64,000 bases of DNA from Selaginella moellendorffii (Eukaryota; Plantae; Lycopodiophyta): assembly GCF_000143415.4 (NCBI RefSeq), contig NW_003314314.1, positions 749,771-813,770 on the forward strand. The letters run 5' to 3'. Shown here in pieces: positions 2,789-48,252 of the stretch (position 1 is its first letter; every line of letters starts with the position of its first letter). Below the pieces are notes generated by a model. That model did no database searches, was not told where the DNA came from, and saw only the letters and a program-made list of their open reading frames with translations. A program made the position numbers and the translations under genes.

Positions 2789-3570
2789 GAAGCTCTGTTT
2801 TTAGGGTTCTTGATAAATGTCACTCTGTTCTTAGGGATTTTGGTCCCCTGTTTCTAGGGCTATTGCGAGTTTCGCCGATCCAAGCGCGATTTCCACGAAT
2901 TATTTTAGTGGGCTCGCAGCTGCCGGACAGCTGCGCGGACCCAATTGCCTGATTCCGCGCGCAACAGAGCAAAACAGGGCAGAATCTCGCAAGCCCAGGT
3001 GAGTGCAACGAAATGATTCACGGACGAACAACAACAGCAACCATAAGAACAAGGAAAAAGATGATGGAATTGTCGACGATCCATTCCATCGATGAGAGGA
3101 TCGAGGCATTAAAAAAGCCTCTGGGGAATTTCGAGGGGCTGGTTTCTCGTTCGCGCTCTTGCCTGCCTCATATCTCATCTCGTTTGATCTGTCTTGCGTG
3201 TACTTTGGCCAAAGAACATGTCCAAAAGAAACAAAGGTATTTATATATATTGTGTTGGTTGACCACTCTCCCCCTGTGTAGTCATGGTCCATGTCTCTCA
3301 CTCAACACACTCAAAGAATATCTCTCTTATCTCACATATCACACACACAACACTCAAATCCTCACTCTGGGATCCAAATCTCGGCTTTCCGATCGCTTGG
3401 GCAGCCGCAGCGCGCGATTTCCTTGGATGGGCAGCCGCGAATCGGGAGAATTCATCCCGAATTGCAGTAGAATCGCAGCATCGGACCAGCGATGAACCAG
3501 AGCACTCGGGATTGTGCTTGATTCGTCCATCCATTCCCGTCGATCGATCGATTGGAGGTGGCGAGAGGTC

Positions 3571-5022: not shown

Positions 5023-5320
5023 AGCTATGGCCTTCCTCTTCCCGGCCTGTGATCGAGGCAGCGCGGCCTCTGGAAACCATGAGTCATCCGAGGCGATTCC
5101 ACTCCACTTCCTCTCGCCACTAGCATTTCTCGCGATCAGCGATGGATCGATCGATCCAGGAGGGGGAGAGCTACGAAAGATCCAATTGCTGGCCGGAAAG
5201 GAATCGCCAGGCGATGCCCTGTACTTTCTGGGCTAAATAGCAAGGAAAAGAGGATGGGTCATGGCTTTGCTTGTAGCAAGCACAACAGTGCAGCCATAGA
5301 CAGGCGGGCAAAACTCCCCC

Positions 5321-5504
5321 ACACGTGCCACGTGGACACGTCGTGCCAATCGGACGGACGCGATCGTCCTATACACCGAGACCGGATTAGTTATGATACG
5401 GCTTAACCCACGGCATAAACCCCTGTGGTTTAGACCATGATTAGTACGGACATACTGCCAGGGTGGGCCACATGGGGTTTAAATCCAGTACGGCCCACGT
5501 GGCC
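5321..5504. promoter_or_regulatory. G-box/ABRE cluster upstream of the MAKR-like gene
   Basis: CACGTG at 5322 and 5329, ACACGTC at 5336, GGCCCACGTGGCC near 5492, TCP site-II-like GTGGGCC near 5463. Confidence 0.5.
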
Positions 5505-32581: not shown

Positions 32582-35500
32582 TTACCAAAATTCTCCACAG
32601 GAGCACGCTCCATCTCTAAACACATGAAACCGACTCGAGTCTCTACACACGATGGTCCGTCGCTCCAGCTTGGAGATCACAGCCGTCGCCCTGTGACAAT
32701 CCTCGCAAACCCGGAGATTCTTAGAGATCCTTATGTCCGTCCCGGCCACCGAGTTGACAAGCGCGCAAGCTATGGCGAGCCTCTCGCTGTGTCCACACAA
32801 TGCCGACTCTTTCTCCTCCTCGGATATGTCGTGCACGACGCTCTTCGTGTCTGGAACGTATCCCCCCTCCTCCTTCATCCTCAAAGTCACTGCTTTGAGC
32901 CTCGCGGAGATCTCTTCCGCCTGAGGATGGCTCGAGTCTCCCGCCGAGAACCTGTGCACTGTCCCAGCTCCATCGATCCACCAGCTTTGCCCCGGCTTCT
33001 TCCAAGCTCGAGCAGCCCTTCTCAAGCTCCGGATCTCGCCACTCTCCTCCCACATCCCCGCGCTCGCGTAGATGCTTGCCATGAGCGAGTAGGCTCCAGC
33101 GTCTTTGTCGTCCAGGCTCACCACCGAGTCGAAAGCAAGCCTCCCAACTCTCACGTTGCTCCACTTCCGGCTCGCGGCGAGCACGGACATCCACACCGTC
33201 GTGTCCGGCTTGAAAGGCATCGTCTCCAGCATCTCCACGGCCTTCTCCAGCTGATTGGCTCGACCCAGGAGATCCACCATGCAGGTGTAGTGTTCCAGCA
33301 GCGGAGCTATCGAGAACTCCCGGCTCATCATCTCAAAGTAGAGCTTGCCTTCGTCGACCAGGCCGGCATGGCTGCAGAGTGATAGGAGGTGGACGAAAGT
33401 GATCGTGTCCGGCCTCACGTTTTCCCTTCGCATCCTCTCGAACAGCTCAAAAGCCTGCTTTGCGTCGCATTGGTGGCTGTATCCGGCCATGAGAGTGCTC
33501 CAAGTTACCAAGTCTCTTGCCGTGGAAGCGTCGAAAACTTGCTGTGCTTCCACCATGCTTCCACACCTCCCGTAGAAAGCCACGAGAGAATTCACCACGA
33601 GCCGATCGTTCTCGAGGCCGGCCTTGCGAATCTCGTCGTGGACGTTCTTCCCGGCCTCCAAGTCGGGCAATCTTCCACAGGCCTTGAGCGCTGCTACGAA
33701 GATTGGAGGCGTAACTGGAACCAGCTTCTCCTCTCGGATGCGAGCGTAGTACTGGAGAGCCAAGTCGGCCTCTCCACTCTGAGCACACCCCCAAATCATC
33801 GTCGTCCACGAAACAACGTCTCGGAGCTTCATCCTCTCAAACAGCTGCCGAGCATCGGGCACGCTTCCGCACTTCACGTACATGTCGAGAAGATTGTTGG
33901 CGACGATCATGTCGGATTCATAGCCAGCTTTGCGAAGTTGGGTGTGGATCTCCAGTCCCTTCTTCAAACTCTCAGCTTTTACTATTCTTCCGTCAACCTG
34001 CTTGCCAGTTTCCTTGGCCGCTAGACTCGTGCAAGCGTTCACTGCCGTGACGTAAGTTCTCCCGTCGGGAACAAAGCCTTCCTCTTGCATTCGAGCAAAC
34101 GAGGAGAGAGCAAAGTCGCCATCTCCACTCTCAGCATGCCCCCAGATCATTGCTGTCCAGGAAACTAAGTCGTGTCGAGGCATCCTGTTGAAAACCTTGC
34201 CCGCATCTTCCATGCTTCGACACTTCGCATACATGTCGACGAGGCTGCTCGCGACGAACATATCCAGTTCGCAGCTGCTCTTCGAAACCTGCGAGTGGAT
34301 TCTCCGGGCTCTTTCTAAACTCTCTGCCTTGACATGCCTTCCTCCCACTTCCGTGGCATCTTCTCTGGCTGCTATAGCCGTGCAAGCGTTGATGGCAGCT
34401 ACAAAAGTTCTTGAGTCGGGCACCAGTCCTGCTTGGTCTTGCATCCTAGTGAAGAGCCGGAGAGCAGTCTCTCCATCTCCACAAGCTGCGTATCCCATGA
34501 TAATCGAGTTCCAAGTCACCAAGTCCCGCTTTTCCATGCAGTCGAATACTCTCCTTGCCTCACGAACGCTGCCACACTTGGCATACATGTCCAGCAGCGT
34601 GTTGGCGACAAAGATGTCATGCTCGTATCCGCTACTCGAGAGCTGAGCGTGGATGGCTCGGCCTCTCTCCAGGCAAATCTCTCGTAGCTTTGTTCTCGGA
34701 TCCGCCGCTGCTAAGGTCGAGCATGCGTTGAGCGCAGCGACAAAAGTTCTCGCGTCGGGCTGGAAGCCTCTTTCCTGCATGGCAGAGAAGAGATTAAAAG
34801 CCTCATTGGCATCTCCAGATTGTGCGTACCCGGTGATGATCGCGTTCCATGACACAACGTCGTGCCTTTGCATTCGATCGAAGACCCTCTTCGTCTGGAC
34901 CATGCTGCCACACTTGGAGTACATGTCCACCAGTGTGCTTGAAACGTAGATGTTGGTTTCGTGGCCTCGGCTGGCGAGCTCGGAGTGTAAAGCCGCTCCT
35001 CTCTTCAAACTTTCCACCTTGACGAGATTTCCATCCACCTGCTTGGCTTGCTCCTTGAGAGCCAGGCTTGTGCAGGCTTTCAAAGCCGCAACGAACGTCC
35101 GAGGGTCCGGAACGAAGCCTTTCTCTTGCATCTCGGCGAAGAACTCGAGAGCCAACTCCCCTTGATCGGCCTGGACAAATCCCATAATCATCGTGTTCCA
35201 CGACGAGACTGTGCGATTCGGCATCTTCTCGAAGAACTCACGAGCGCGATCCAGACTACCGCACTTGGCGAACATGTCTAGCACCGTGTTGGCCACAAAG
35301 ATGTGCAAGCCTTTCTTCTCTTCTCCATTCCCATCGCTGCCGTGCTCTTCCAGAATCTCGCCCAAGATCCTGATCCCTGTGGCCAAATCCCTGGCGCTGG
35401 TACACGCCTTCAACGCCGCAAGAATCACGGCATTGCTGGGCATGATTCCATCCCCGCGGAGCTGATCGTAGACCCCGATCGGGTCCTGCTGCCCTGACGC

Positions 35501-35605
35501 ACCCTGATTGCGCCGCCCAGCGGCATTCTTCCTCCTCACACCTCCTACCTCGCGCAAGCTGGGAATCGTCCTGTATCGCCTGAGAAGAGCGCGCCGCAAG
35601 AGCAT
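32582..35605 (-). CDS. PLS-class PPR-DYW C-to-U RNA-editing factor (WW-type PG box; ends in EFW)
   Basis: PLS array, E1/E2, KKPGQSWW, HSERLA (HxE), CEDCH (CxxC), RFHVFRDGACSCGEFW. Confidence 0.95.
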   Translation of the reverse strand: MLLRRALLRRYRTIPSLREVGGVRRKNAAGRRNQGASGQQDPIGVYDQLRGDGIMPSNAVILAALKACTSARDLATGIRILGEILEEHGSDGNGEEKKGLHIFVANTVLDMFAKCGSLDRAREFFEKMPNRTVSSWNTMIMGFVQADQGELALEFFAEMQEKGFVPDPRTFVAALKACTSLALKEQAKQVDGNLVKVESLKRGAALHSELASRGHETNIYVSSTLVDMYSKCGSMVQTKRVFDRMQRHDVVSWNAIITGYAQSGDANEAFNLFSAMQERGFQPDARTFVAALNACSTLAAADPRTKLREICLERGRAIHAQLSSSGYEHDIFVANTLLDMYAKCGSVREARRVFDCMEKRDLVTWNSIIMGYAACGDGETALRLFTRMQDQAGLVPDSRTFVAAINACTAIAAREDATEVGGRHVKAESLERARRIHSQVSKSSCELDMFVASSLVDMYAKCRSMEDAGKVFNRMPRHDLVSWTAMIWGHAESGDGDFALSSFARMQEEGFVPDGRTYVTAVNACTSLAAKETGKQVDGRIVKAESLKKGLEIHTQLRKAGYESDMIVANNLLDMYVKCGSVPDARQLFERMKLRDVVSWTTMIWGCAQSGEADLALQYYARIREEKLVPVTPPIFVAALKACGRLPDLEAGKNVHDEIRKAGLENDRLVVNSLVAFYGRCGSMVEAQQVFDASTARDLVTWSTLMAGYSHQCDAKQAFELFERMRRENVRPDTITFVHLLSLCSHAGLVDEGKLYFEMMSREFSIAPLLEHYTCMVDLLGRANQLEKAVEMLETMPFKPDTTVWMSVLAASRKWSNVRVGRLAFDSVVSLDDKDAGAYSLMASIYASAGMWEESGEIRSLRRAARAWKKPGQSWWIDGAGTVHRFSAGDSSHPQAEEISARLKAVTLRMKEEGGYVPDTKSVVHDISEEEKESALCGHSERLAIACALVNSVAGTDIRISKNLRVCEDCHRATAVISKLERRTIVCRDSSRFHVFRDGACSCGEFW

Positions 35606-35947
35606 GGAGCCAGGCGCCCCTCGCACCAAGCTCCAAGAACCCTAAAACCAAGTAACCCTAAAATCCACAAAGTTAAAATTTGGCGCGCAAAAGTGTTTTA
35701 ATTTTAGGGTTCTTGGGCGCGCGCTAAACATTCCCTTCCTTTATAAAACTGCTATAACTAATCCGGCGAGGCGGCGCATCTTGCTTTCACAATCTCCCCA
35801 CTGTGGCGAGCGTTTCGTTACCGTTTAACACCCTCCCATGCTCTCCATGCAACGGAAATTCCGGCTGGCCACCATTTAAATCCAGCGCGATGGCATCTCA
35901 GCCCAGATCGATCGCTAACATACCACTATCCATCAATCTCTCCTTCC

Positions 35948-36778
35948 ATGGCGCTAGAGCTCCACTCGCTCATCCTTTTCTTCTTCATGGCTTTGCTATG
36001 CTGCTACGCTCTGGAATCTCGAGGTAAGCAGCAGCTCCCTCCACTCTCGATCGCCCAGTATCGATCTTAACTTTCGTTGGTTTTTTCGTTGCCAGATCCA
36101 GGAACTTCGCGTAAACTTCTTCTCCGCGATCGCGAGGAACAGCCGGAGAGGCTCATTCCTTCCGGCCCCTCGGATCCAAAGCAGTACCAAAACTCGATCA
36201 GTCAGGCGGCTTGCCGCAAAGAATTCGGCGTCGGGATCCCTGCGCCACCCTCCGGCAATCACCACCTCGAGCGAGAAGTTCCCACTGGACCGGAAGATCC
36301 ATTCCAGCGCCTCAAGGACTTCGTTGCGTGCTGGAACTCGGCCGTCGGCAAGCCTCACCACGATGTCTTGACGCATCGATCTCAATCCATCCCAGTAACT
36401 TCATCTTCTTCCAAGGACTCCATCCCATTTCCACCAGCAGCTTCTTCTTCCAAGAATTCTATCCCAGTTCCAGGAGCAGCTTCTTTTTCCAAGGATCCTA
36501 TCCCAGTTCCAGCAGCAGCTTTTTCGTCCAAGGATTCTATCCCAGTTCCTTCTTCTTCTTCCAAGGATTCTATCTCAGTTCCAGCAGCAACTTCTTCCAA
36601 GGATTCTTCTCAATCTGGTCCAGCAACTTCTTCCATAAATGCTATCCCAGCAGCTCGTTCTATCCCACCTCGAACTTTCAAGGACGATCCTTCCAGCAAG
36701 CAGCTCAATGCCATCCAACCCGAGAGGCAAGTTCCCTCTGGAGCCGATCCGATCCATCACAAATCCCTGGAACCCTGA
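35948..36778 (+). CDS. Secreted CLE (CLAVATA3/ESR) peptide precursor with extra CLE-like motifs; exons 35948-36023 and 36096-36778
   Basis: Signal peptide MALELHSLILFFFMALLCCYALES; phase-1 GT-AG intron; C-terminal CLE dodecamer RQVPSGADPIHH (36725-36760). Confidence 0.85.
36383..36660 (+). repeat. Coding tandem repeat, roughly 33-39-bp units (KDSIPVPAAASSS-like), about 6-7 copies
   Basis: Recurrent ccaaggattctatcccagttccagcagcagcttcttctt-like units. Confidence 0.85.
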
Positions 36779-36994
36779 TACTCTAGCTGACACTTTTTTC
36801 TATCGTATCCCTTTGTTTTCCTGTCGCCGAGCCAAAGTTTTGCTAGAGAGACTAGCTTGGCCTGTAAAATTTTCTCTAACCATTAGAGAAGGAAAAGAAT
36901 ACGAGAAAGTATCTTGTAGACAACGTACCTCGTCAATCTCAAACCGAGGACATGCATCTGTTGGAGAAATATAAATTTCGCCTCCATTGGATAG

Positions 36995-39318
36995 TTAGCT
37001 CCTAAGAGGTGAGCTACTGTAGCCCGGATGTTGCTGCGAGCGTAGAATCATTCCAGTCATGGAAGGCGTCTGATAGTCTCGATTGTATGAGTATCCTCTC
37101 GTCGTGGCTCGCTGTGAGAAATGCGAGCTTTGAGCCGAGAGAATGTATGCTCGACCACTTCTCTCGTAGAGCTGCCTGTTTCCAATCCTCTCCTGGATTT
37201 CTCCAAGCTCGGACTCAAGCGCCTTGGAGAGTTTGTCACCACCTTGCAACGAAAGCGAGGCTTGGATTAGCTGCTGAGTTGCTCGAAGACACGTCTGAGC
37301 TGCCTCGATGTCACCGGAATCTGCCAAAAAACCAGCCTCGGAGATCGTCTTTGCTGCCAGCAGCCGGTTCCTTTGTCGATCAACTTCCACGCTAACATGT
37401 TGCCGGTTGGCGCTCACGAAATCCGGACGAGCGATCGAGAGCTTCCGGGACGCAGTGTGAAGCTTCTCTCCACGCACTGGATCGGTGAAAGAGCACCTAG
37501 CTTCGAGGATAAACTGTTCCTTGAGGCTGAAGTTGAGTGCCGGGAGCCTAATCTCCAGAAGAACGTCTCGTTCCTCGTCGGCATAGAGATCCCCCAGCTT
37601 CACGGTTGCTCGTGACGAATCCTCCACGACCGAGCTCCTGTAGCTGCCAGCATGAACGCTCGTTATCCGAGACCCTCCGGCTTCACATCCTCCAACGTTC
37701 GTGGAGACTACCAGCTGAACGTCCTGGACGACAACGCTTAGAAGTCCCCCGACGCACTGAGCAAAAGCGTCCTGGACGCCACCTTCTGCCTGGATAAACG
37801 AGAAGGTTCCTCCCGAGACTTGAGAAATGGAGTGCATGGTCGCAGCGTCGTGATCAGCTCCGAATCCGAAAGTGTGGACTGGAATGCGTGGCGATATCTG
37901 TCCGGTGTTGCTCAATCGTCGTGACAGTAGCTTGTGACGGTGGAAGCTGGAGCTTGGAGAGGAGTTGAAAACCTGGCCCCGAGTTCCCAGCGAGTAAGTG
38001 TCATGTCCGTCGGAGAGCAGCATTATACTCGCGACTGGATTCTTGTGCTGCCTCTCTTCCAAAACTTTCGATCCTTTGCGCAGCCCCTCGGCAATGTTCG
38101 TTCCTCCGGTGCAAACCAACGTCTCCACTGCTCGCAGCGCGAACTGCCGGCCTTCCTCCACCATAGTCTTGAGCGGGAAGAGCCTCTTTGCCGACGAGGA
38201 AAACACCACCACCGAGAGACGGTCCCGGGAGCTTAAGTTGCGGATCACAAACGCCATTGCTCGCTTGAGGAGCAAGAGCTTTGTCCCTGCCATGCTTCCG
38301 CTCACGTCCAGGACTGTCACTAGATCGATCGGCGCTCGATCCAAGACTGCTGGTTCTGTCCCGGAATCGAGAAGCTCCGGAGCTTTGACGTGAACCAGGA
38401 CGTTGAAACTGTTCCGCTGCTCCGAGAATGACACGCTGCCAACTTCTGCGTAAGCGCTGAGCTCGAGCTTGGATCTTTGCTCGGACGAAGTCACATTTTC
38501 TGGAAACTCATCGTCGCAAGAGCCTTGGTTGGCGAGAGCTTCGTCATCGTCGTAAACGAGAGGTTCTATGACTTGATGCTGCTGCTGCTGTTGCCTCGAG
38601 GGTGGCGACGCTCGACTGATTTCTTGAGTGGCATTGGCGTTTGCGATCGACTCGTCAATGATTCGTATGACGGGGTCCTGTTCCTCGTGTTGTTGTTGTT
38701 GTTCTTGGCGGAGAAGCTCGTTGAAACTTGGCAGCGGCGATGGTGGTGGGATGATGAGTGGCGGCGGCGGGGTCGAGGATCTCTTGGGCTTGTTCGTGTC
38801 TGGAAGAGGGCCGTGCCATGGAACTTCCTTCCACCGGGATCGACACACGGGACACACCATGTTGCCGTGCTTCACGTTGGACGCAATGCACGAGAAGTGG
38901 AAGGTGTGCGAGCACTCGGCTGTGAAGAGTGCCTGTCCAACCCCGGTTTTGATAGCTTCCAGGCAGATCGGGCAAGAACTCTGCAAGGAATCACACAAAG
39001 AACGATCAAAGATCGCGAAAAAAGAGAAGAGAGAGAGACAACTAAGAACGCTACCCACAGCTCGACTCGACTAGAAAGAAGAAAACTATGATAAATATCT
39101 TCTCGATCGAAAAGGAGGAATGCTTCTAATCCAGAGGAGAGCTTTGGATCTAGCTCTAAGAAGCATACCTTGATGGATGATCGTGCCGGCGTTGCCGGCC
39201 GGCCTTGGAAATCCCATTCTTCGTCGGATGGAAAGCCCTCGGAATCGGCCGGGAATGTCCAAGAACACATTCGCAATCCAAGAACGCTCCTGGCGACGCT
39301 CCAGACCTTCTTCCCCAT
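36995..39318 (-). CDS. RING-H2 + von Willebrand A E3 ubiquitin ligase (WAV3/EDA40-like); exons 39318-39169 and 38980-36995
   Basis: CPIC...ECSHTFHFSC...CPVC; RAPIDLVTVLDVSGSMAGTKL; LLSDG; FGFGADHD; ELYADEER-like motif; QRATTRG. Confidence 0.9.
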
Positions 39319-46473: not shown

Positions 46474-48252
46474 TTATGAATGCAATGCAATTGAGCCTCT
46501 GCCTCCCTCCACGCTCCAGTTACTCCCCAGGTACTCAGCTCGCTCAATCCCTCGCTCAAGTCGCTCAAGCTTGAAGAGTTTCAAGTCTCGGAAGATGCGG
46601 GACGTTCCTGTCAGCATAGGAAAAAGATTCCAGGTTCCACGCTCCCAAGACTTGGTGTCATGTCGAGACGACATGTTAATACGGCTCTTGAGTTCGAGTG
46701 CCAAATCCGCACCAAAGTGCACAGCCAGTCTGCCCCGATCGAGTTTCACGACAGCCCATCTGACAAGGGGAAGCGTCAAGTTGCATGTCACTCCTTTTTG
46801 GACGGTCAACTATCGAAGTGTATGCATAGAGAACCACCAGCGTTGACGATGACGTCCCGGGGTGACAAATCACAACCTTGTCAAACCGTCGAGGATACTT
46901 TCTACAAAACATATGTACACTTTTGGAGAAATTAAAAACCACCAAAAACGTTTTCTCGGAAACTATTTTAGAAAAGAATATCTGTGTGTCGCCCAACACT
47001 ATCTACGATCCGACTGGGACCTCCGCATCCCAGCCAATACTGACTTTGAGTGACCATGTAGAACTCAACACTGTCAGCTCCAAACTTCTGCATCACTTTG
47101 AGTTGGACGAGATGGAAAACCTGTAAAACTGCCACCACCTTTCGTTCTGTGTACATGCTGTCAATGGGATTCTCTAGCGCATCGTATCTGGAATTCTTCA
47201 ACTTCGCCAGGTTGAGCAAGGCATGGTATCTGGACGACCTGAAAGTGGATCAAATGCCGGACACAACCTTTCTTCACAAGCTGAGCCACCCTTGCCCGCA
47301 AACACCTCACAAATCTTGATCTTTCGACGACGGGTCCTATGTCGACCGCCTGAAATGCTCGCTCACCACTCCAGCCTTCAGATCTTCAAAGTCATGTCTC
47401 TGGCACATAATGAAACCTTGGAGCAACTGATGCCCATGCAGTTTTGTGAAGATCAGCCGCCTCTGGCCGTCTTGTAACTGGAGACACTGATGTACTGGAG
47501 GCACTCGTGTAAAACATCCTGTATAGTAGCTCCTCAGTATCACGTCTCCCACCCAATTGGTGATGGACTCCAAGGTTCCAGCGACGGAAGACTTCTCTCG
47601 GATTGCCCGTCTTGAGGCCTCCAGATCTTTGTCAGGGAGGACTTCTTTCTGGAGAGGGCTCAGCTCATTGCTCGACCATACGGAGAGATAGAAAGTCCTG
47701 CGTTTCGTGTCCTTTTGGTAGTCCTTGTAGTTTTCTCTCGTTGGGCTGCTTACCAAGAGTGCCTTGCTGATGAAAAGAGGGATGTTTTTCAGCTCCATGT
47801 CCACCAAGAAACATATATCCGAATCTACCTCAAGTTCCACTTCCACATACGTCCTGATAGTCTTGCAAGACTCGGTATCTTCCATTACCATCCGGCAGGA
47901 AGTAATAGAGAGATCCCCCTCTGGCCAGCAGCAGTACCTTCTGCTTTTCCTTGAGCAGCAGCGCCAGAACGTAGAGGAGGAAACCAGGTTCCCAAGCACC
48001 AAAGCAGCCTGTCTTCCCTCACACTGGAAAAGGCTCCACCTTGAGCTTCCACACGTCCCTGAAGCATTCTTGCTCGATGATCTTTGAGTCTTCCGAATCC
48101 CAAATGGACTCAGTCGTTGGATTGTCATCCAAGTCAAGCATCGGCAGTACCTTGGAGTCCCACGCGTTCAACAAGATGCAGCACAATTGATCATCCGTTT
48201 CTTTCTGCGGAAGTGGAGATCGAACTCTGGGGTTAGAAGGAGACGACCACAA
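46474..48252 (-). pseudogene. Frameshifted Crinkler/RHS-like P-loop NTPase with possible restriction-endonuclease-fold C-terminus
   Basis: Across frames: IIEQECFRDVWKL; AALVLGN/PG-[xGKS missing]-FLLYVLALLLKEKQKVLL; ICFLVD; LLVSSPTRENYKDYQK; FYLSVWSSNEL; later NPIDSMY...LVQLKV. Motif order matches CRN/RHS NTPases as recalled. Confidence 0.55.

What the first reader, a model, noticed from the sequence alone, without database searches (positions are those of the whole stretch)
35948..36778. Multi-motif peptide-hormone precursor: one CLE, two 13-residue CLE variants and an IDA-like motif
Seen: signal peptide, then RLIPSGPSDPKQY (36149) and REVPTGPEDPFQR (36272), each preceded by Glu like the terminal canonical CLE (QPE-R, HLE-R, QPE-R). 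Both carry a one-residue insertion before DP and lack the terminal HH/HN. Between them lies FGVGIPAPPSGNHH; the protein ends RQVPSGADPIHH-KSLEP. Known: CLE consensus is RxVPSGPDPLHH, the IDA EPIP motif is FGYLPKGVPIPPSAPSKRHN, PIP peptides have an SGPS core, and all are read by related LRR-RKs. Inference: one precursor may release several ligands of different specificity, or preserve a CLE/IDA/PIP intermediate in an early vascular plant.
Basis: partly seen in the sequence, partly recalled or inferred. Interest (0 to 1): 0.8.

Follow-up and report, generated by a model that had tools for sequence, protein, structure and literature searches.

The report
Known spikemoss CLE gene, conserved extra motifs
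This is the already catalogued Selaginella moellendorffii peptide-hormone gene SmCLE7, but in front of its normal CLE hormone it carries two conserved 13-residue CLE-derived motifs that also exist as a separate small secreted protein elsewhere in the genome, pointing to an undescribed offshoot of the CLE family.

Summary
A two-exon gene (35948..36023, 36096..36778) encodes a 252-residue secreted precursor with RLIPSGPSDPKQY, FGVGIPAPPSGNHH, REVPTGPEDPFQR and a terminal RQVPSGADPIHH-KSLEP. The gene is known: GenBank BAH56538.1, SmCLE7. Published CLE lists give only its terminal dodecamer.

New here: the N-terminal half has one relative among 1.84 billion proteins. It is a 113-residue S. moellendorffii protein, LOC112346529, with the same two 13-residue motifs, the same two Cys and a KPH end, but no canonical CLE. 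It lies just downstream of SmCLE5. Motif columns are 63% identical and the linker between them 13% (p about 1e-4). Of 33 conserved residues, 19 use different codons. So the duplication is old and the motifs have been under selection.

The IDA-like stretch is not conserved in that paralogue, and the PIP-like SGPS is not either.

Caveat: stranded RNA reads over the locus are all antisense. They belong to the long 3'UTR of the convergent RING-VWA gene, and the predicted intron is never seen spliced. Sense expression is therefore unproven, and peptide release and activity are untested.

The scan noted the same architecture before, on the other haplotype (s1-408353) and at the paralogue loci (s1-392261, s1-346898).

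The parts
35948..36023 (+). Exon 1 (76 nt, ends in phase 1): MALELHSLILFFFMALLCCYALESR, the signal peptide. The deposited SmCLE7 model starts at the second Met (35987).
   Evidence: hydropathy. P0003 begins MALLCCYALESRDPG; significant similarity to the SmCLE5 N-terminus, 0 of 2000 shuffles.
36024..36095 (+). Predicted intron, 72 nt, GTAAGC..TTGCCAG, phase 1. It contains an in-frame stop if retained.
   Evidence: Same position and phase as the intron of the paralogue and intron 1 of SmCLE5. Not seen spliced in RNA: depth about 32 across it and no joint.
36096..36778 (+). Exon 2, one continuous ORF from the N-terminal module to the terminal CLE and the stop (TGA 36776..36778).
   Evidence: Intact in the second haplotype, which differs only by in-frame indels.
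36107..36118 (+). SRKL motif just after the signal peptide. It is shared with the paralogue (SRKL) and with SmCLE5 (ARKL).
36149..36187 (+). 13-residue CLE-derived motif 1, RLIPSGPSDPKQY (residues 44-56), preceded by QPE.
   Evidence: 9 of 13 identical to REAPSGPDDPEQY of LOC112346529.
36212..36214 (+). Conserved Cys (residue 65), nine residues after motif 1.
   Evidence: Invariant column in alignment A2.
36224..36265 (+). The 'IDA-like' stretch FGVGIPAPPSGNHH (residues 69-82). Most likely a linker or a degenerate CLE copy.
   Evidence: Not conserved in the paralogue. V to I between haplotypes at 36230. An A to P variant at 36242 appears in 3 of 25 RNA reads.
36272..36310 (+). 13-residue CLE-derived motif 2, REVPTGPEDPFQR (residues 85-97), preceded by LE.
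   Evidence: 8 of 13 identical to RDVPNGPEDPYSS of LOC112346529.
36329..36361 (+). Conserved end of the module: CW....KPHH (Cys104, Trp105, Lys-Pro-His 111-113).
   Evidence: C, W, K, P and H are invariant in A2. The paralogue ends CWKPHAR-stop.
36404..36597 (+). Tandem repeat, period 39 nt, 5.1 copies (SSSKDSIPVPAAA-like). This is the Ser/Pro-rich variable spacer, and it differs in length between haplotypes.
   Evidence: Indels of 6 and 9 nt between haplotypes. It is the likely cause of the NCBI name 'flocculation protein FLO11' for the other allele.
36725..36760 (+). Canonical CLE dodecamer RQVPSGADPIHH (residues 236-247), preceded by QPE.
   Evidence: Listed as SmCLE7 in Whitewoods et al. 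2018, supplementary file 2.
36761..36775 (+). C-terminal extension KSLEP. SmCLE5 has RSTPPSMLIPDLN at the same place.
35749..36860 (-). Terminal 3'UTR exon of the convergent RING-VWA (WAV3-like) gene. It is antisense to the whole of SmCLE7. Its intron lies at about 36861..36927 and its CDS at 36995..39058 on the minus strand.
   Evidence: all 178 stranded reads have the orientation of minus-strand RNA. The joint 36860>36928 has CT..AC ends, which is GT..AG on the minus strand. A 3441-nt contig runs from 35749 through that joint and about 2.25 kb further.

Best explanation
The locus is SmCLE7 of Selaginella moellendorffii, a catalogued CLE peptide-hormone gene. Its 252-residue precursor is composite.

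Shown:
- A signal peptide and a canonical C-terminal CLE dodecamer, RQVPSGADPIHH, which is the only part used in published CLE lists.
- Upstream of it, a conserved 'twin module'. This is two units, each made of P-[ED]|R-x-[VIA]-P-[STN]-G-P-x-D-P-x-x-x (13 residues: a CLE domain with one extra residue before DP and no H-H/N end), then 7-9 residues, then one Cys. The module ends in CW..KPH.
- The module is a separable unit under purifying selection. It exists on its own in the 113-residue secreted protein LOC112346529, which sits next to SmCLE5.

Inferred:
- The module arose by duplication of a CLE domain inside a CLE gene, followed by divergence.
- After secretion, the same protease that frees the terminal CLE cuts before each Arg in the shared P-[ED]|R context.
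- The terminal dodecamer then acts as an ordinary R-type CLE ligand on CLV1/BAM-type receptors.
- The module fragments lack the H-H/N anchor that subfamily-XI LRR receptors grip. They would therefore not act as classical CLE agonists. They would work either as a distinct secreted signal, possibly held together by a disulfide, or as a pro-domain or modulator.

My odds:
- The module has a sequence-specific function: about 0.75.
- It is released as separate bioactive peptide(s): about 0.35.

The 'IDA-like' and 'PIP-like' resemblances are chance or degenerate linker.
For: Identity:
- The exon-2 ORF falls in one 90% cluster with BAH56538.1, 'CLAVATA3/endosperm surrounding region 7 [S. moellendorffii]', and with the other allele XP_024527273.1.
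- SmCLE7 = RQVPSGADPIHH and SmCLE5 = RYVPGGPDPLHH in Whitewoods 2018, supplementary file 2.

Module homology:
- Exhaustive phmmer of residues 26-127 against 1.84e9 representatives gives only the query itself and P0004 (E = 1.2e-4 library-wide; pairwise BLASTP 2e-13, 37% identity).
- P0004 is LOC112346529. Its allele is P0005.

Conservation:
- 17/27 motif columns are identical, against 4/31 in the linker between the motifs (p = 9e-5) and 17/79 over all non-motif columns (p = 1.2e-4).
- 19 of 33 conserved residues with degenerate codons use different codons.

Unit structure:
- Unit A against unit B is significant within each protein (0/2000 shuffles).
- Matching units in the two proteins score higher (72, 81) than mismatched units (56, 57). 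The unit duplication therefore predates the gene duplication.

Shared gene structure:
- A phase-1 intron lies one residue before P..SRKL in both genes.

Link to canonical CLE:
- The P-[ED]|R context is the same before all five 13-mer and CLE motifs and before the SmCLE5 dodecamer.
- The SmCLE7 terminal CLE with its flank aligns to unit A as QPERQVPSG-ADP against QPERLIPSGPSDP (1/2000).
- The stand-alone module gene lies about 1.5 kb downstream of SmCLE5 on the same strand.
- The SmCLE7 signal peptide and the start of exon 2 resemble those of SmCLE5 (0/2000).

Other:
- AlphaFold2 gives a disordered model for P0004 beyond the signal-peptide helix and one short helix at 52-58 (mean pLDDT 54). This fits a pro-peptide rather than a folded domain.
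- The role of the HN/HH anchor is taken from Furumizu et al. 2021 (PMC8462819).
Against: - No sense-strand transcript was seen. In a stranded RNA-seq run, all 178 reads over 35700-37000 come from the minus strand. The predicted intron is fully covered and never spliced. Contigs from three other studies also retain it.
- Differences between the haplotypes inside the CDS are 5 non-synonymous and 2 synonymous, plus two in-frame indels. Present-day relaxation of selection cannot be excluded.
- Conservation is shown against one paralogue only. No orthologue from another species was found.
- Nothing shows cleavage, modification, secretion or receptor binding.
- The 13-mers lack the C-terminal H-H/N and break the 12-residue register, both of which matter for canonical CLE perception.
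Confidence: 0.75

Rival explanations
1. One precursor releases several active ligands of different classes (CLE, 13-residue CLE variants, IDA-like, PIP-like), or it preserves an ancestral CLE/IDA/PIP intermediate.
For: - The multi-motif layout is real.
- The 13-mers are conserved in a paralogue.
- PAPPSG..HH loosely recalls PIPPSA..HN of IDA, and IDA and CLE share PSGP and HN features (Furumizu 2021).
- Earlier notes of this scan report other SmCLE genes with IDA-like modules (s1-366136). I did not test that.
Against: - The IDA-like stretch is not conserved in the paralogue and is polymorphic.
- It does not fit PIPxSxPSKRHN, and it is internal rather than C-terminal.
- SGPS becomes SGPD in the paralogue, and there is no GxGH end.
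- The module was found only in S. moellendorffii. That argues for a derived feature rather than an ancestral one.
Confidence: 0.1
2. The internal motifs are decaying relics of an older multi-CLE precursor with no present function. Only the terminal dodecamer matters and the rest is variable pro-domain.
For: - Multi-CLE precursors are known in rice, wheat, Medicago, Lotus and nematodes.
- The 13-mers have lost the HH/HN end and the 12-residue register.
- The published lists treat SmCLE7 as a single-domain gene.
Against: - Conservation is specific to the motifs (63% against 13%) although synonymous sites have diverged.
- The Cys, Trp and KPH positions are conserved.
- A stand-alone gene keeps only the module and no canonical CLE. 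That is hard to explain if the module were useless.
Confidence: 0.12
3. SmCLE7 is today a silent or pseudogenising locus. The RNA over it is only the antisense 3'UTR of the neighbouring RING-VWA gene, and the ORF survives by recency.
For: - 0 of 178 stranded reads are sense, and the intron is never spliced in four studies.
- 5 non-synonymous against 2 synonymous allelic differences.
- A related follow-up in this scan called another CLE copy silent (s1-346877). I did not test that.
Against: - The ORF, both splice sites and all three R-motifs are intact and identical in the two haplotypes.
- Allelic divergence is about 0.9% in the CDS against about 2.9% in the flanking DNA.
- CLE genes are typically expressed in few cells, only 12% of one run of unknown tissue was read, and contigs drop rare forms.
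Confidence: 0.15

Closest known systems
Canonical single-domain CLE prepropeptides (CLV3/ESR-related; here SmCLE1-15 of Miwa et al. 2009 as listed by Whitewoods et al. 2018)
   Same: Signal peptide, variable region, and a C-terminal R-x-V-P-S-G-x-D-P-I-H-H dodecamer with a short extension. The gene is catalogued as SmCLE7. Its N-terminus and CLE flank resemble those of SmCLE5.
   Different: - 252 residues instead of about 80-120.
- Ala instead of Pro at position 7. 'GADP' occurs only once in that data set, although rice has A/S7 CLEs.
- It carries an extra conserved two-motif, two-Cys module and a 13-residue tandem repeat.
Multi-CLE-domain precursors (rice CLE75/76, wheat CLE30/31, Medicago MtCLE14/22/26/27, Lotus LjCLE32/33/46/47, Globodera CLEs)
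   Same: Several CLE-type motifs in one exon and one ORF, each with a conserved N-terminal flank. Release of several peptides has been hypothesised for them.
   Different: In those proteins the motifs are near-identical canonical 12-mers ending in HN/HH, set in regular 24-36-residue repeats. Here the internal motifs are 13-mers with an inserted residue and no HH/HN. Each is followed by a Cys, the spacing is irregular, and they also exist without any canonical CLE.
LOC112346529 / LOC112342690 of S. moellendorffii (XP_024531451.1, XP_024520632.1; 'uncharacterized protein')
   Same: The only detectable homologue of the N-terminal half. It has the same intron position and phase, SRKL, two P-[ED]|R 13-mers, two Cys and a CW..KPH end.
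   Different: It ends right after KPHAR, with no Ser/Pro repeat and no canonical CLE. Its signal peptide is not significantly similar to that of SmCLE7 (94 of 2000 shuffles score as high). It sits next to SmCLE5.
IDA/IDL peptides (PIPPSAPSKRHN; MpIDA1 EVPPQGPSPIHN)
   Same: A Pro-rich stretch ending in HH, with P-x-P-P-S in common with IPAPPSGNHH.
   Different: The stretch is two to three residues shorter, has no central SxPS or K/R-H-N, is internal in the precursor, and is not conserved in the paralogue.
PIP/PIPL peptides (TOLS2/PIPL3 ASGPSRRGAGH)
   Same: The four residues SGPS occur in motif 1.
   Different: There is no GxGH end, and SGPS is not conserved (SGPD in the paralogue). The context is plainly CLE-type, R-x-I-P-S-G-P.

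Membership tests
CLE (whole gene, through the terminal dodecamer) | N-terminal secretion signal | tested here: met
   Hydrophobic core at residues 5-22 and homology to the SmCLE5 N-terminus. No SignalP-type predictor was available.
CLE (whole gene, through the terminal dodecamer) | 12-residue domain R/H-x-V-P-x-G-P-[DN]-P-x-H-[HN] at or near the C-terminus | tested here: met
   RQVPSGADPIHH followed by a 5-residue extension. It matches 11 of 12 positions, with Ala at position 7. It is listed as SmCLE7. A/S at position 7 occurs in rice CLEs.
CLE (whole gene, through the terminal dodecamer) | Expressed and processed to a mature peptide | tested here: inconclusive
   Only antisense RNA was seen. 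Processing is not testable with these tools.
CLE domain (internal 13-mers taken as CLE domains) | R1, P4, G6, P7 and the D/N-P core | tested here: met
   R-x-[IV]-P-[ST]-G-P-x-D-P is present in both 13-mers and in both 13-mers of the paralogue.
CLE domain (internal 13-mers taken as CLE domains) | 12-residue register and C-terminal H-[HN] anchor | tested here: not met
   There is one extra residue between P7 and D. The ends are KQY, FQR, EQY and YSS.
Multi-CLE-domain precursors | Two or more canonical CLE domains in regular repeats within one ORF | tested here: not met
   There is only one canonical domain. The internal copies are diverged and irregularly spaced (motif starts at residues 44, 85 and 236).
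IDA/IDL | C-terminal PIPxSxPSKRHN-type 12-mer with a central Pro and R/K-H-N | tested here: not met
   IPAPPSGNHH is shorter, is internal, and lacks SxPS-K/R. It is not conserved in the paralogue.
PIP/PIPL | SGPS core plus a C-terminal GxGH | tested here: not met
   SGPS occurs in motif 1 only and reads SGPD in the paralogue. No GxGH is present.
Any Pfam family | Match to a curated profile | tested here: not met
   No Pfam hits at E <= 10 for exon 2, P0003, P0004 or SmCLE5 exon 3.

The most novel reading that the evidence does not exclude
The twin 13-residue module (R-x-V-P-x-G-P-x-D-P, then a Cys, twice, ending CW..KPH) defines a new lycophyte family of secreted signals derived from CLE. Under this reading it is released from SmCLE7 alongside the canonical CLE peptide and is made on its own by LOC112346529. 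It would have a receptor specificity different from CLE, or act as a natural antagonist or modulator, perhaps as a disulfide-linked two-chain peptide. The SmCLE5 + LOC112346529 tandem pair would then be a CLE7-like ancestor split into its two signals by duplication and complementary loss.
Probability: 0.25. Interest if true: 0.75.

Novelty: new variant of a known kind. Interest (0 to 1): 0.5.

Why it matters
CLE peptides are the best-studied plant peptide hormones, and how new peptide families arise from old ones is an open question. This locus shows a CLE domain that was duplicated inside its own precursor. The copy gained one residue, lost the His-His/Asn receptor anchor and gained a Cys, and was then kept under selection long enough for synonymous sites to diverge. 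It is even kept as a gene of its own. If the module is released and active, it would be a natural example of a peptide ligand leaving its family's receptor-binding rules, and it would offer a handle on ligand-receptor co-evolution in a lycophyte. If it is only a pro-domain, it would still be one of the few conserved non-ligand elements in CLE precursors. In practice, the published SmCLE7 entry understates what the gene encodes. NCBI names the other allele 'flocculation protein FLO11', which appears to be a misnomer caused by the Ser-rich repeat.

Tried and rejected
Searches that found nothing further:
- Pfam on exon 2, the deposited SmCLE7, the paralogue and SmCLE5: no family.
- Word-index search with exon 2 and with the module profile A2: only the query's own clusters. 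No orthologue in another species.
- Exhaustive phmmer: one paralogue only.
- The search of earlier findings by sequence: blank.
- Full-text search for SmCLE7 and for the strings PSGPSDP, PTGPEDP, PSGPDDP, PNGPEDP, SGPEDP and TGPDDP: no paper.
- Miwa et al. 2009 (PMC2688290) is not held. I could not check whether SmCLE7 was cloned from cDNA.
- The supplements of Furumizu 2021 are not held. SmIDA1-3 could not be compared with the IDA-like stretch.

Analyses without a usable result:
- Comparison of the two haplotypes: 7 SNPs and 2 indels in the CDS, none inside the three R-motifs. About 1.4 would be expected there by chance, so this has no power.
- AlphaFold2 of the paralogue: low confidence and disordered. 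No fold search was attempted.
- A relic of the module in SmCLE5 exon 2 (PRNVPNF against PDRDVPNG): not significant, 177 of 2000 shuffles. Rejected.
- The 13-residue Ser/Pro tandem repeat as further degenerate peptide modules: no convincing alignment. Treated as a spacer.

Procedure:
- The joined exon-1 + exon-2 protein was used only inside local scripts, for coordinates and pairwise alignments. It was never sent to a search tool. Searches used exon 2 by reference (window:36095-36775 or window:36095-36400) or database proteins.
Full report
**What is in the sequence**

The stretch 35948..36778 holds a two-exon gene on the + strand.
- Exon 1 (35948..36023, 76 nt) encodes MALELHSLILFFFMALLCCYALESR plus the first base of an Asp codon.
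- A 72-nt GT..AG intron (36024..36095) follows.
- Exon 2 (36096..36778) is one open frame to a TGA.

The 252-residue product has a hydrophobic N-terminal core (Kyte-Doolittle means of about 2.2 to 3.1 for windows starting at residues 5-12). After that come, in order:
- SRKL;
- EEQPE|RLIPSGPSDPKQY (R at 36149);
- a Cys (36212);
- FGVGIPAPPSGNHH (36224..36265);
- LE|REVPTGPEDPFQR (R at 36272);
- ..ACW....KPHH (36329..36361);
- a Ser/Pro-rich spacer containing a 39-nt tandem repeat of 5.1 copies (36404..36597);
- IQPE|RQVPSGADPIHH (36725..36760) and KSLEP.

The loose pattern R..P.G[PA].{0,1}[DN]P hits three times in the six-frame translation of the whole 64-kb window. All three hits are in this frame, against 0.045 expected from shuffled translations.

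**The gene is already known**

The exon-2 ORF belongs to one 90%-identity cluster with two other entries.
- BAH56538.1 is named 'CLAVATA3/endosperm surrounding region 7 [Selaginella moellendorffii]'. It starts at the second Met and uses the same splice.
- XP_024527273.1 is the allele on the other haplotype, named 'flocculation protein FLO11, partial'.

The CLE motif list in Whitewoods et al. 2018 (PMC6089843, supplementary file 2) gives SmCLE7 = RQVPSGADPIHH. So the literature treats this as a single-domain CLE gene. I found no paper mentioning the internal motifs. Miwa et al. 2009, which named the gene, is not held.

The neighbours are an intronless PPR-DYW gene (32582..35629, minus strand) and a RING + VWA + Vwaint gene, WAV3-like (36995..39058, minus strand). 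The same neighbours flank the other allele.

**The internal motifs belong to a conserved, separable module**

An exhaustive phmmer search used residues 26-127 (window:36095-36400) against 1.84 billion representative proteins. It returned only the query's own cluster and one other protein, P0004 (E = 1.2e-4 for the whole library; pairwise BLASTP 2e-13, 37% identity).

P0004 is S. moellendorffii 'uncharacterized protein LOC112346529', and its allele is LOC112342690. It is 113 residues long. It consists of a signal peptide, SRKL, NPE|REAPSGPDDPEQY, a Cys, KPD|RDVPNGPEDPYSS and ..SCWKPHAR-stop. It has no canonical CLE. Only about 150 nt separate its stop from a convergent ABC-transporter gene.

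Its single intron is phase 1 and lies one residue before P..SRKL, exactly as in SmCLE7.

Conservation in the alignment (A2) is concentrated in the motifs.
- Columns of the two 13-mers are 17/27 identical.
- The linker between them is 4/31 identical (Fisher p = 9e-5).
- All non-motif columns together are 17/79 identical (p = 1.2e-4).
- Outside the motifs the invariant positions are P..SRK, the two Cys, Trp and KPH.

Of 33 conserved residues with degenerate codons, 19 use different codons in the two genes. The duplication is therefore old, and the motif identity reflects selection on the protein in this frame.

The unit structure is also significant.
- Within each protein the two units (13-mer, then 7-9 residues, then a Cys) are significantly alike (0/2000 shuffles).
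- Matching units in the two proteins score higher (72, 81) than mismatched units (56, 57). The unit was therefore doubled before the genes separated.

**The module derives from CLE domains**

- All five 13-mer and CLE motifs in the two genes, and the SmCLE5 dodecamer, are preceded by [PL]-[ED]: QPE, HLE and QPE in SmCLE7, NPE and KPD in the paralogue, HPD in SmCLE5.
- The SmCLE7 terminal CLE with its flank aligns to unit A as QPERQVPSG-ADP against QPERLIPSGPSDP (1/2000).
- The stand-alone module gene lies about 1.5 kb downstream of, and on the same strand as, a three-exon canonical CLE gene. That gene's dodecamer, RYVPGGPDPLHH, identifies it as SmCLE5.
- The SmCLE7 signal peptide and the start of its exon 2 (HS.L..MA..CC.., phase-1 intron, split Asp codon, S.RKLL) are significantly similar to those of SmCLE5 (0/2000). 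The two CLE flanks and extensions are similar too (1/2000).

SmCLE7 thus shares its ends with SmCLE5 and its middle with the gene next to SmCLE5. One reading, which is inference only, is that a CLE7-like ancestor was duplicated and that the tandem pair then divided the two parts between them.

**What is not supported**

FGVGIPAPPSGNHH corresponds to FQTAPSSNDPPAVVAKP in the paralogue and so is not conserved. It is V to I polymorphic between haplotypes. An A to P variant at 36242 appears in 3 of 25 RNA reads. It does not fit the IDA pattern PIPxSxPSKRHN used by Furumizu et al. 2021, it is shorter than an IDA peptide, and it is internal in the precursor.

The SGPS of motif 1 is SGPD in the paralogue, and no GxGH end exists. 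The PIP link therefore falls as well.

The module was found in no other species. That gives no support to the idea of a preserved ancestral CLE/IDA/PIP intermediate. The databases may hold few lycophyte proteomes, though, so this absence is weak evidence.

**Transcription**

Reads of one stranded RNA-seq run (about 12% of it read) and contigs of three other studies were laid on 35700..37000.
- All 178 reads have the first mate on the + strand.
- The only splice joint is 36860>36928, with CT..AC ends. That is a GT..AG intron on the minus strand.
- A 3441-nt contig runs from 35749 through that joint and about 2.25 kb further into the RING-VWA gene.
- The predicted SmCLE7 intron is covered at full depth (about 32) and is retained in every contig.

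The RNA seen is therefore the long 3'UTR of the convergent RING-VWA gene, antisense to the whole of SmCLE7. No sense mRNA was detected. This does not show that the gene is silent. The tissue is unknown, CLE genes are often expressed in very few cells, and contigs drop rare forms. It does leave the gene model resting on the deposited protein, on the conserved intron position, and on coding-frame conservation.

Differences between the haplotypes in the CDS are 5 non-synonymous and 2 synonymous, plus two in-frame indels in the repeat. None falls in the three R-motifs, but the numbers are too small to test anything. The CDS is about three times less diverged between haplotypes than its flanks.

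**Mechanism**

Shown:
- a secreted-type precursor;
- a canonical terminal CLE;
- a selected twin module that can stand alone;
- a shared P-[ED]|R context;
- predicted disorder of the paralogue beyond the signal-peptide helix and one short helix at 52-58 (AlphaFold2, mean pLDDT 54, shallow alignment).

Inferred, from established knowledge of CLE maturation (my own knowledge, not tested here): subtilase-type cleavage occurs before Arg1, carboxypeptidase trims the C-terminal extension, and Pro is hydroxylated and arabinosylated. On that basis, the precursor is cut before each Arg. The terminal dodecamer acts as an R-type CLE on CLV1/BAM-type receptors.

The module fragments lack the HN/HH end that contacts the paired Arg of subfamily-XI receptors (Furumizu 2021), and they carry an extra residue. 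They are therefore unlikely to be classical CLE agonists. They may form a distinct signal, possibly disulfide-linked through the two conserved Cys, or they may serve as a pro-domain or modulator.

I put about 0.75 on the module having a sequence-specific function and about 0.35 on release as separate bioactive peptide(s).

**Comparison and verdict**

The gene is a member of the CLE family through its terminal dodecamer. The internal 13-mers meet the N-terminal half of the CLE definition and fail the 12-residue register and the H-[HN] end. They should therefore be called CLE-derived, not CLE.

Known multi-CLE precursors in rice, wheat, legumes and nematodes carry near-identical canonical 12-mers in regular repeats. 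This gene does not.

The finding is a new variant of a known kind. The gene is known, while the module, its conservation and its stand-alone paralogue appear to be undescribed.

Earlier notes of this scan had flagged the same architecture on the other haplotype (s1-408353) and the stand-alone gene (s1-392261, s1-346898). They also mention further 13-residue or elongated CLE variants in this genome (s1-363866, s1-351364), which I could not reach with the tools.

Interest 0.5. It is a real and testable lead on how a peptide family diverges, tempered by the lack of sense expression, of processing data and of cross-species evidence.

Noticed in passing
window 35749-37000 (minus strand): The convergent RING-VWA (WAV3-like) gene (CDS 36995..39058) has a spliced 3'UTR. 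A 67-nt intron lies at about 36861..36927, followed by a terminal exon of about 1.1 kb that is antisense to the entire SmCLE7 gene. All stranded RNA reads over SmCLE7 belong to it. Read depth is about 2-3 times higher over 35964-36535 than over 36712-36843, which I cannot explain.
   Followed up: partly
L002:2855-5440 (GL377580.1, S. moellendorffii): SmCLE5 is a three-exon gene (2855..2933, 2989..3107, 3173..3451). The stand-alone twin-module gene LOC112346529 (5001..5088, 5187..5440) follows it in tandem on the same strand. SmCLE7 shares its N-terminus and CLE flank with the first and its module with the second.
   Followed up: partly
L001:3001-5972 (GL377572.1, other haplotype): NCBI models the allele of SmCLE7 as 'flocculation protein FLO11, partial', with a first exon placed far upstream inside the PPR gene region. 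The name and the model look like artefacts of the Ser-rich repeat and of antisense RNA coverage.
   Followed up: partly
window 36242: A G>C variant (Ala to Pro inside FGVGIPAPPSGNHH) appears in 3 of 25 RNA reads. It is in neither assembled haplotype. It could be an error, a third allele or a paralogue.
   Followed up: no
window 32582-35629 (minus strand): An intronless 1015-residue PPR protein with E, E+ and DYW deaminase domains lies directly upstream. It is typical of the large family of organellar RNA-editing factors in Selaginella.
   Followed up: no
window 36404-36597: The tandem repeat has a 13-residue unit (SSSKDSIPVPAAA), the same length as the CLE-derived 13-mers. I found no convincing homology between them. 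Repeat length differs between haplotypes by 6 and 9 nt.
   Followed up: partly
window 46474-48252: Another first-stage note on this window (s1-420877) reports a Crinkler/RHS-type NTPase relic present twice. I did not look at it.
   Followed up: no
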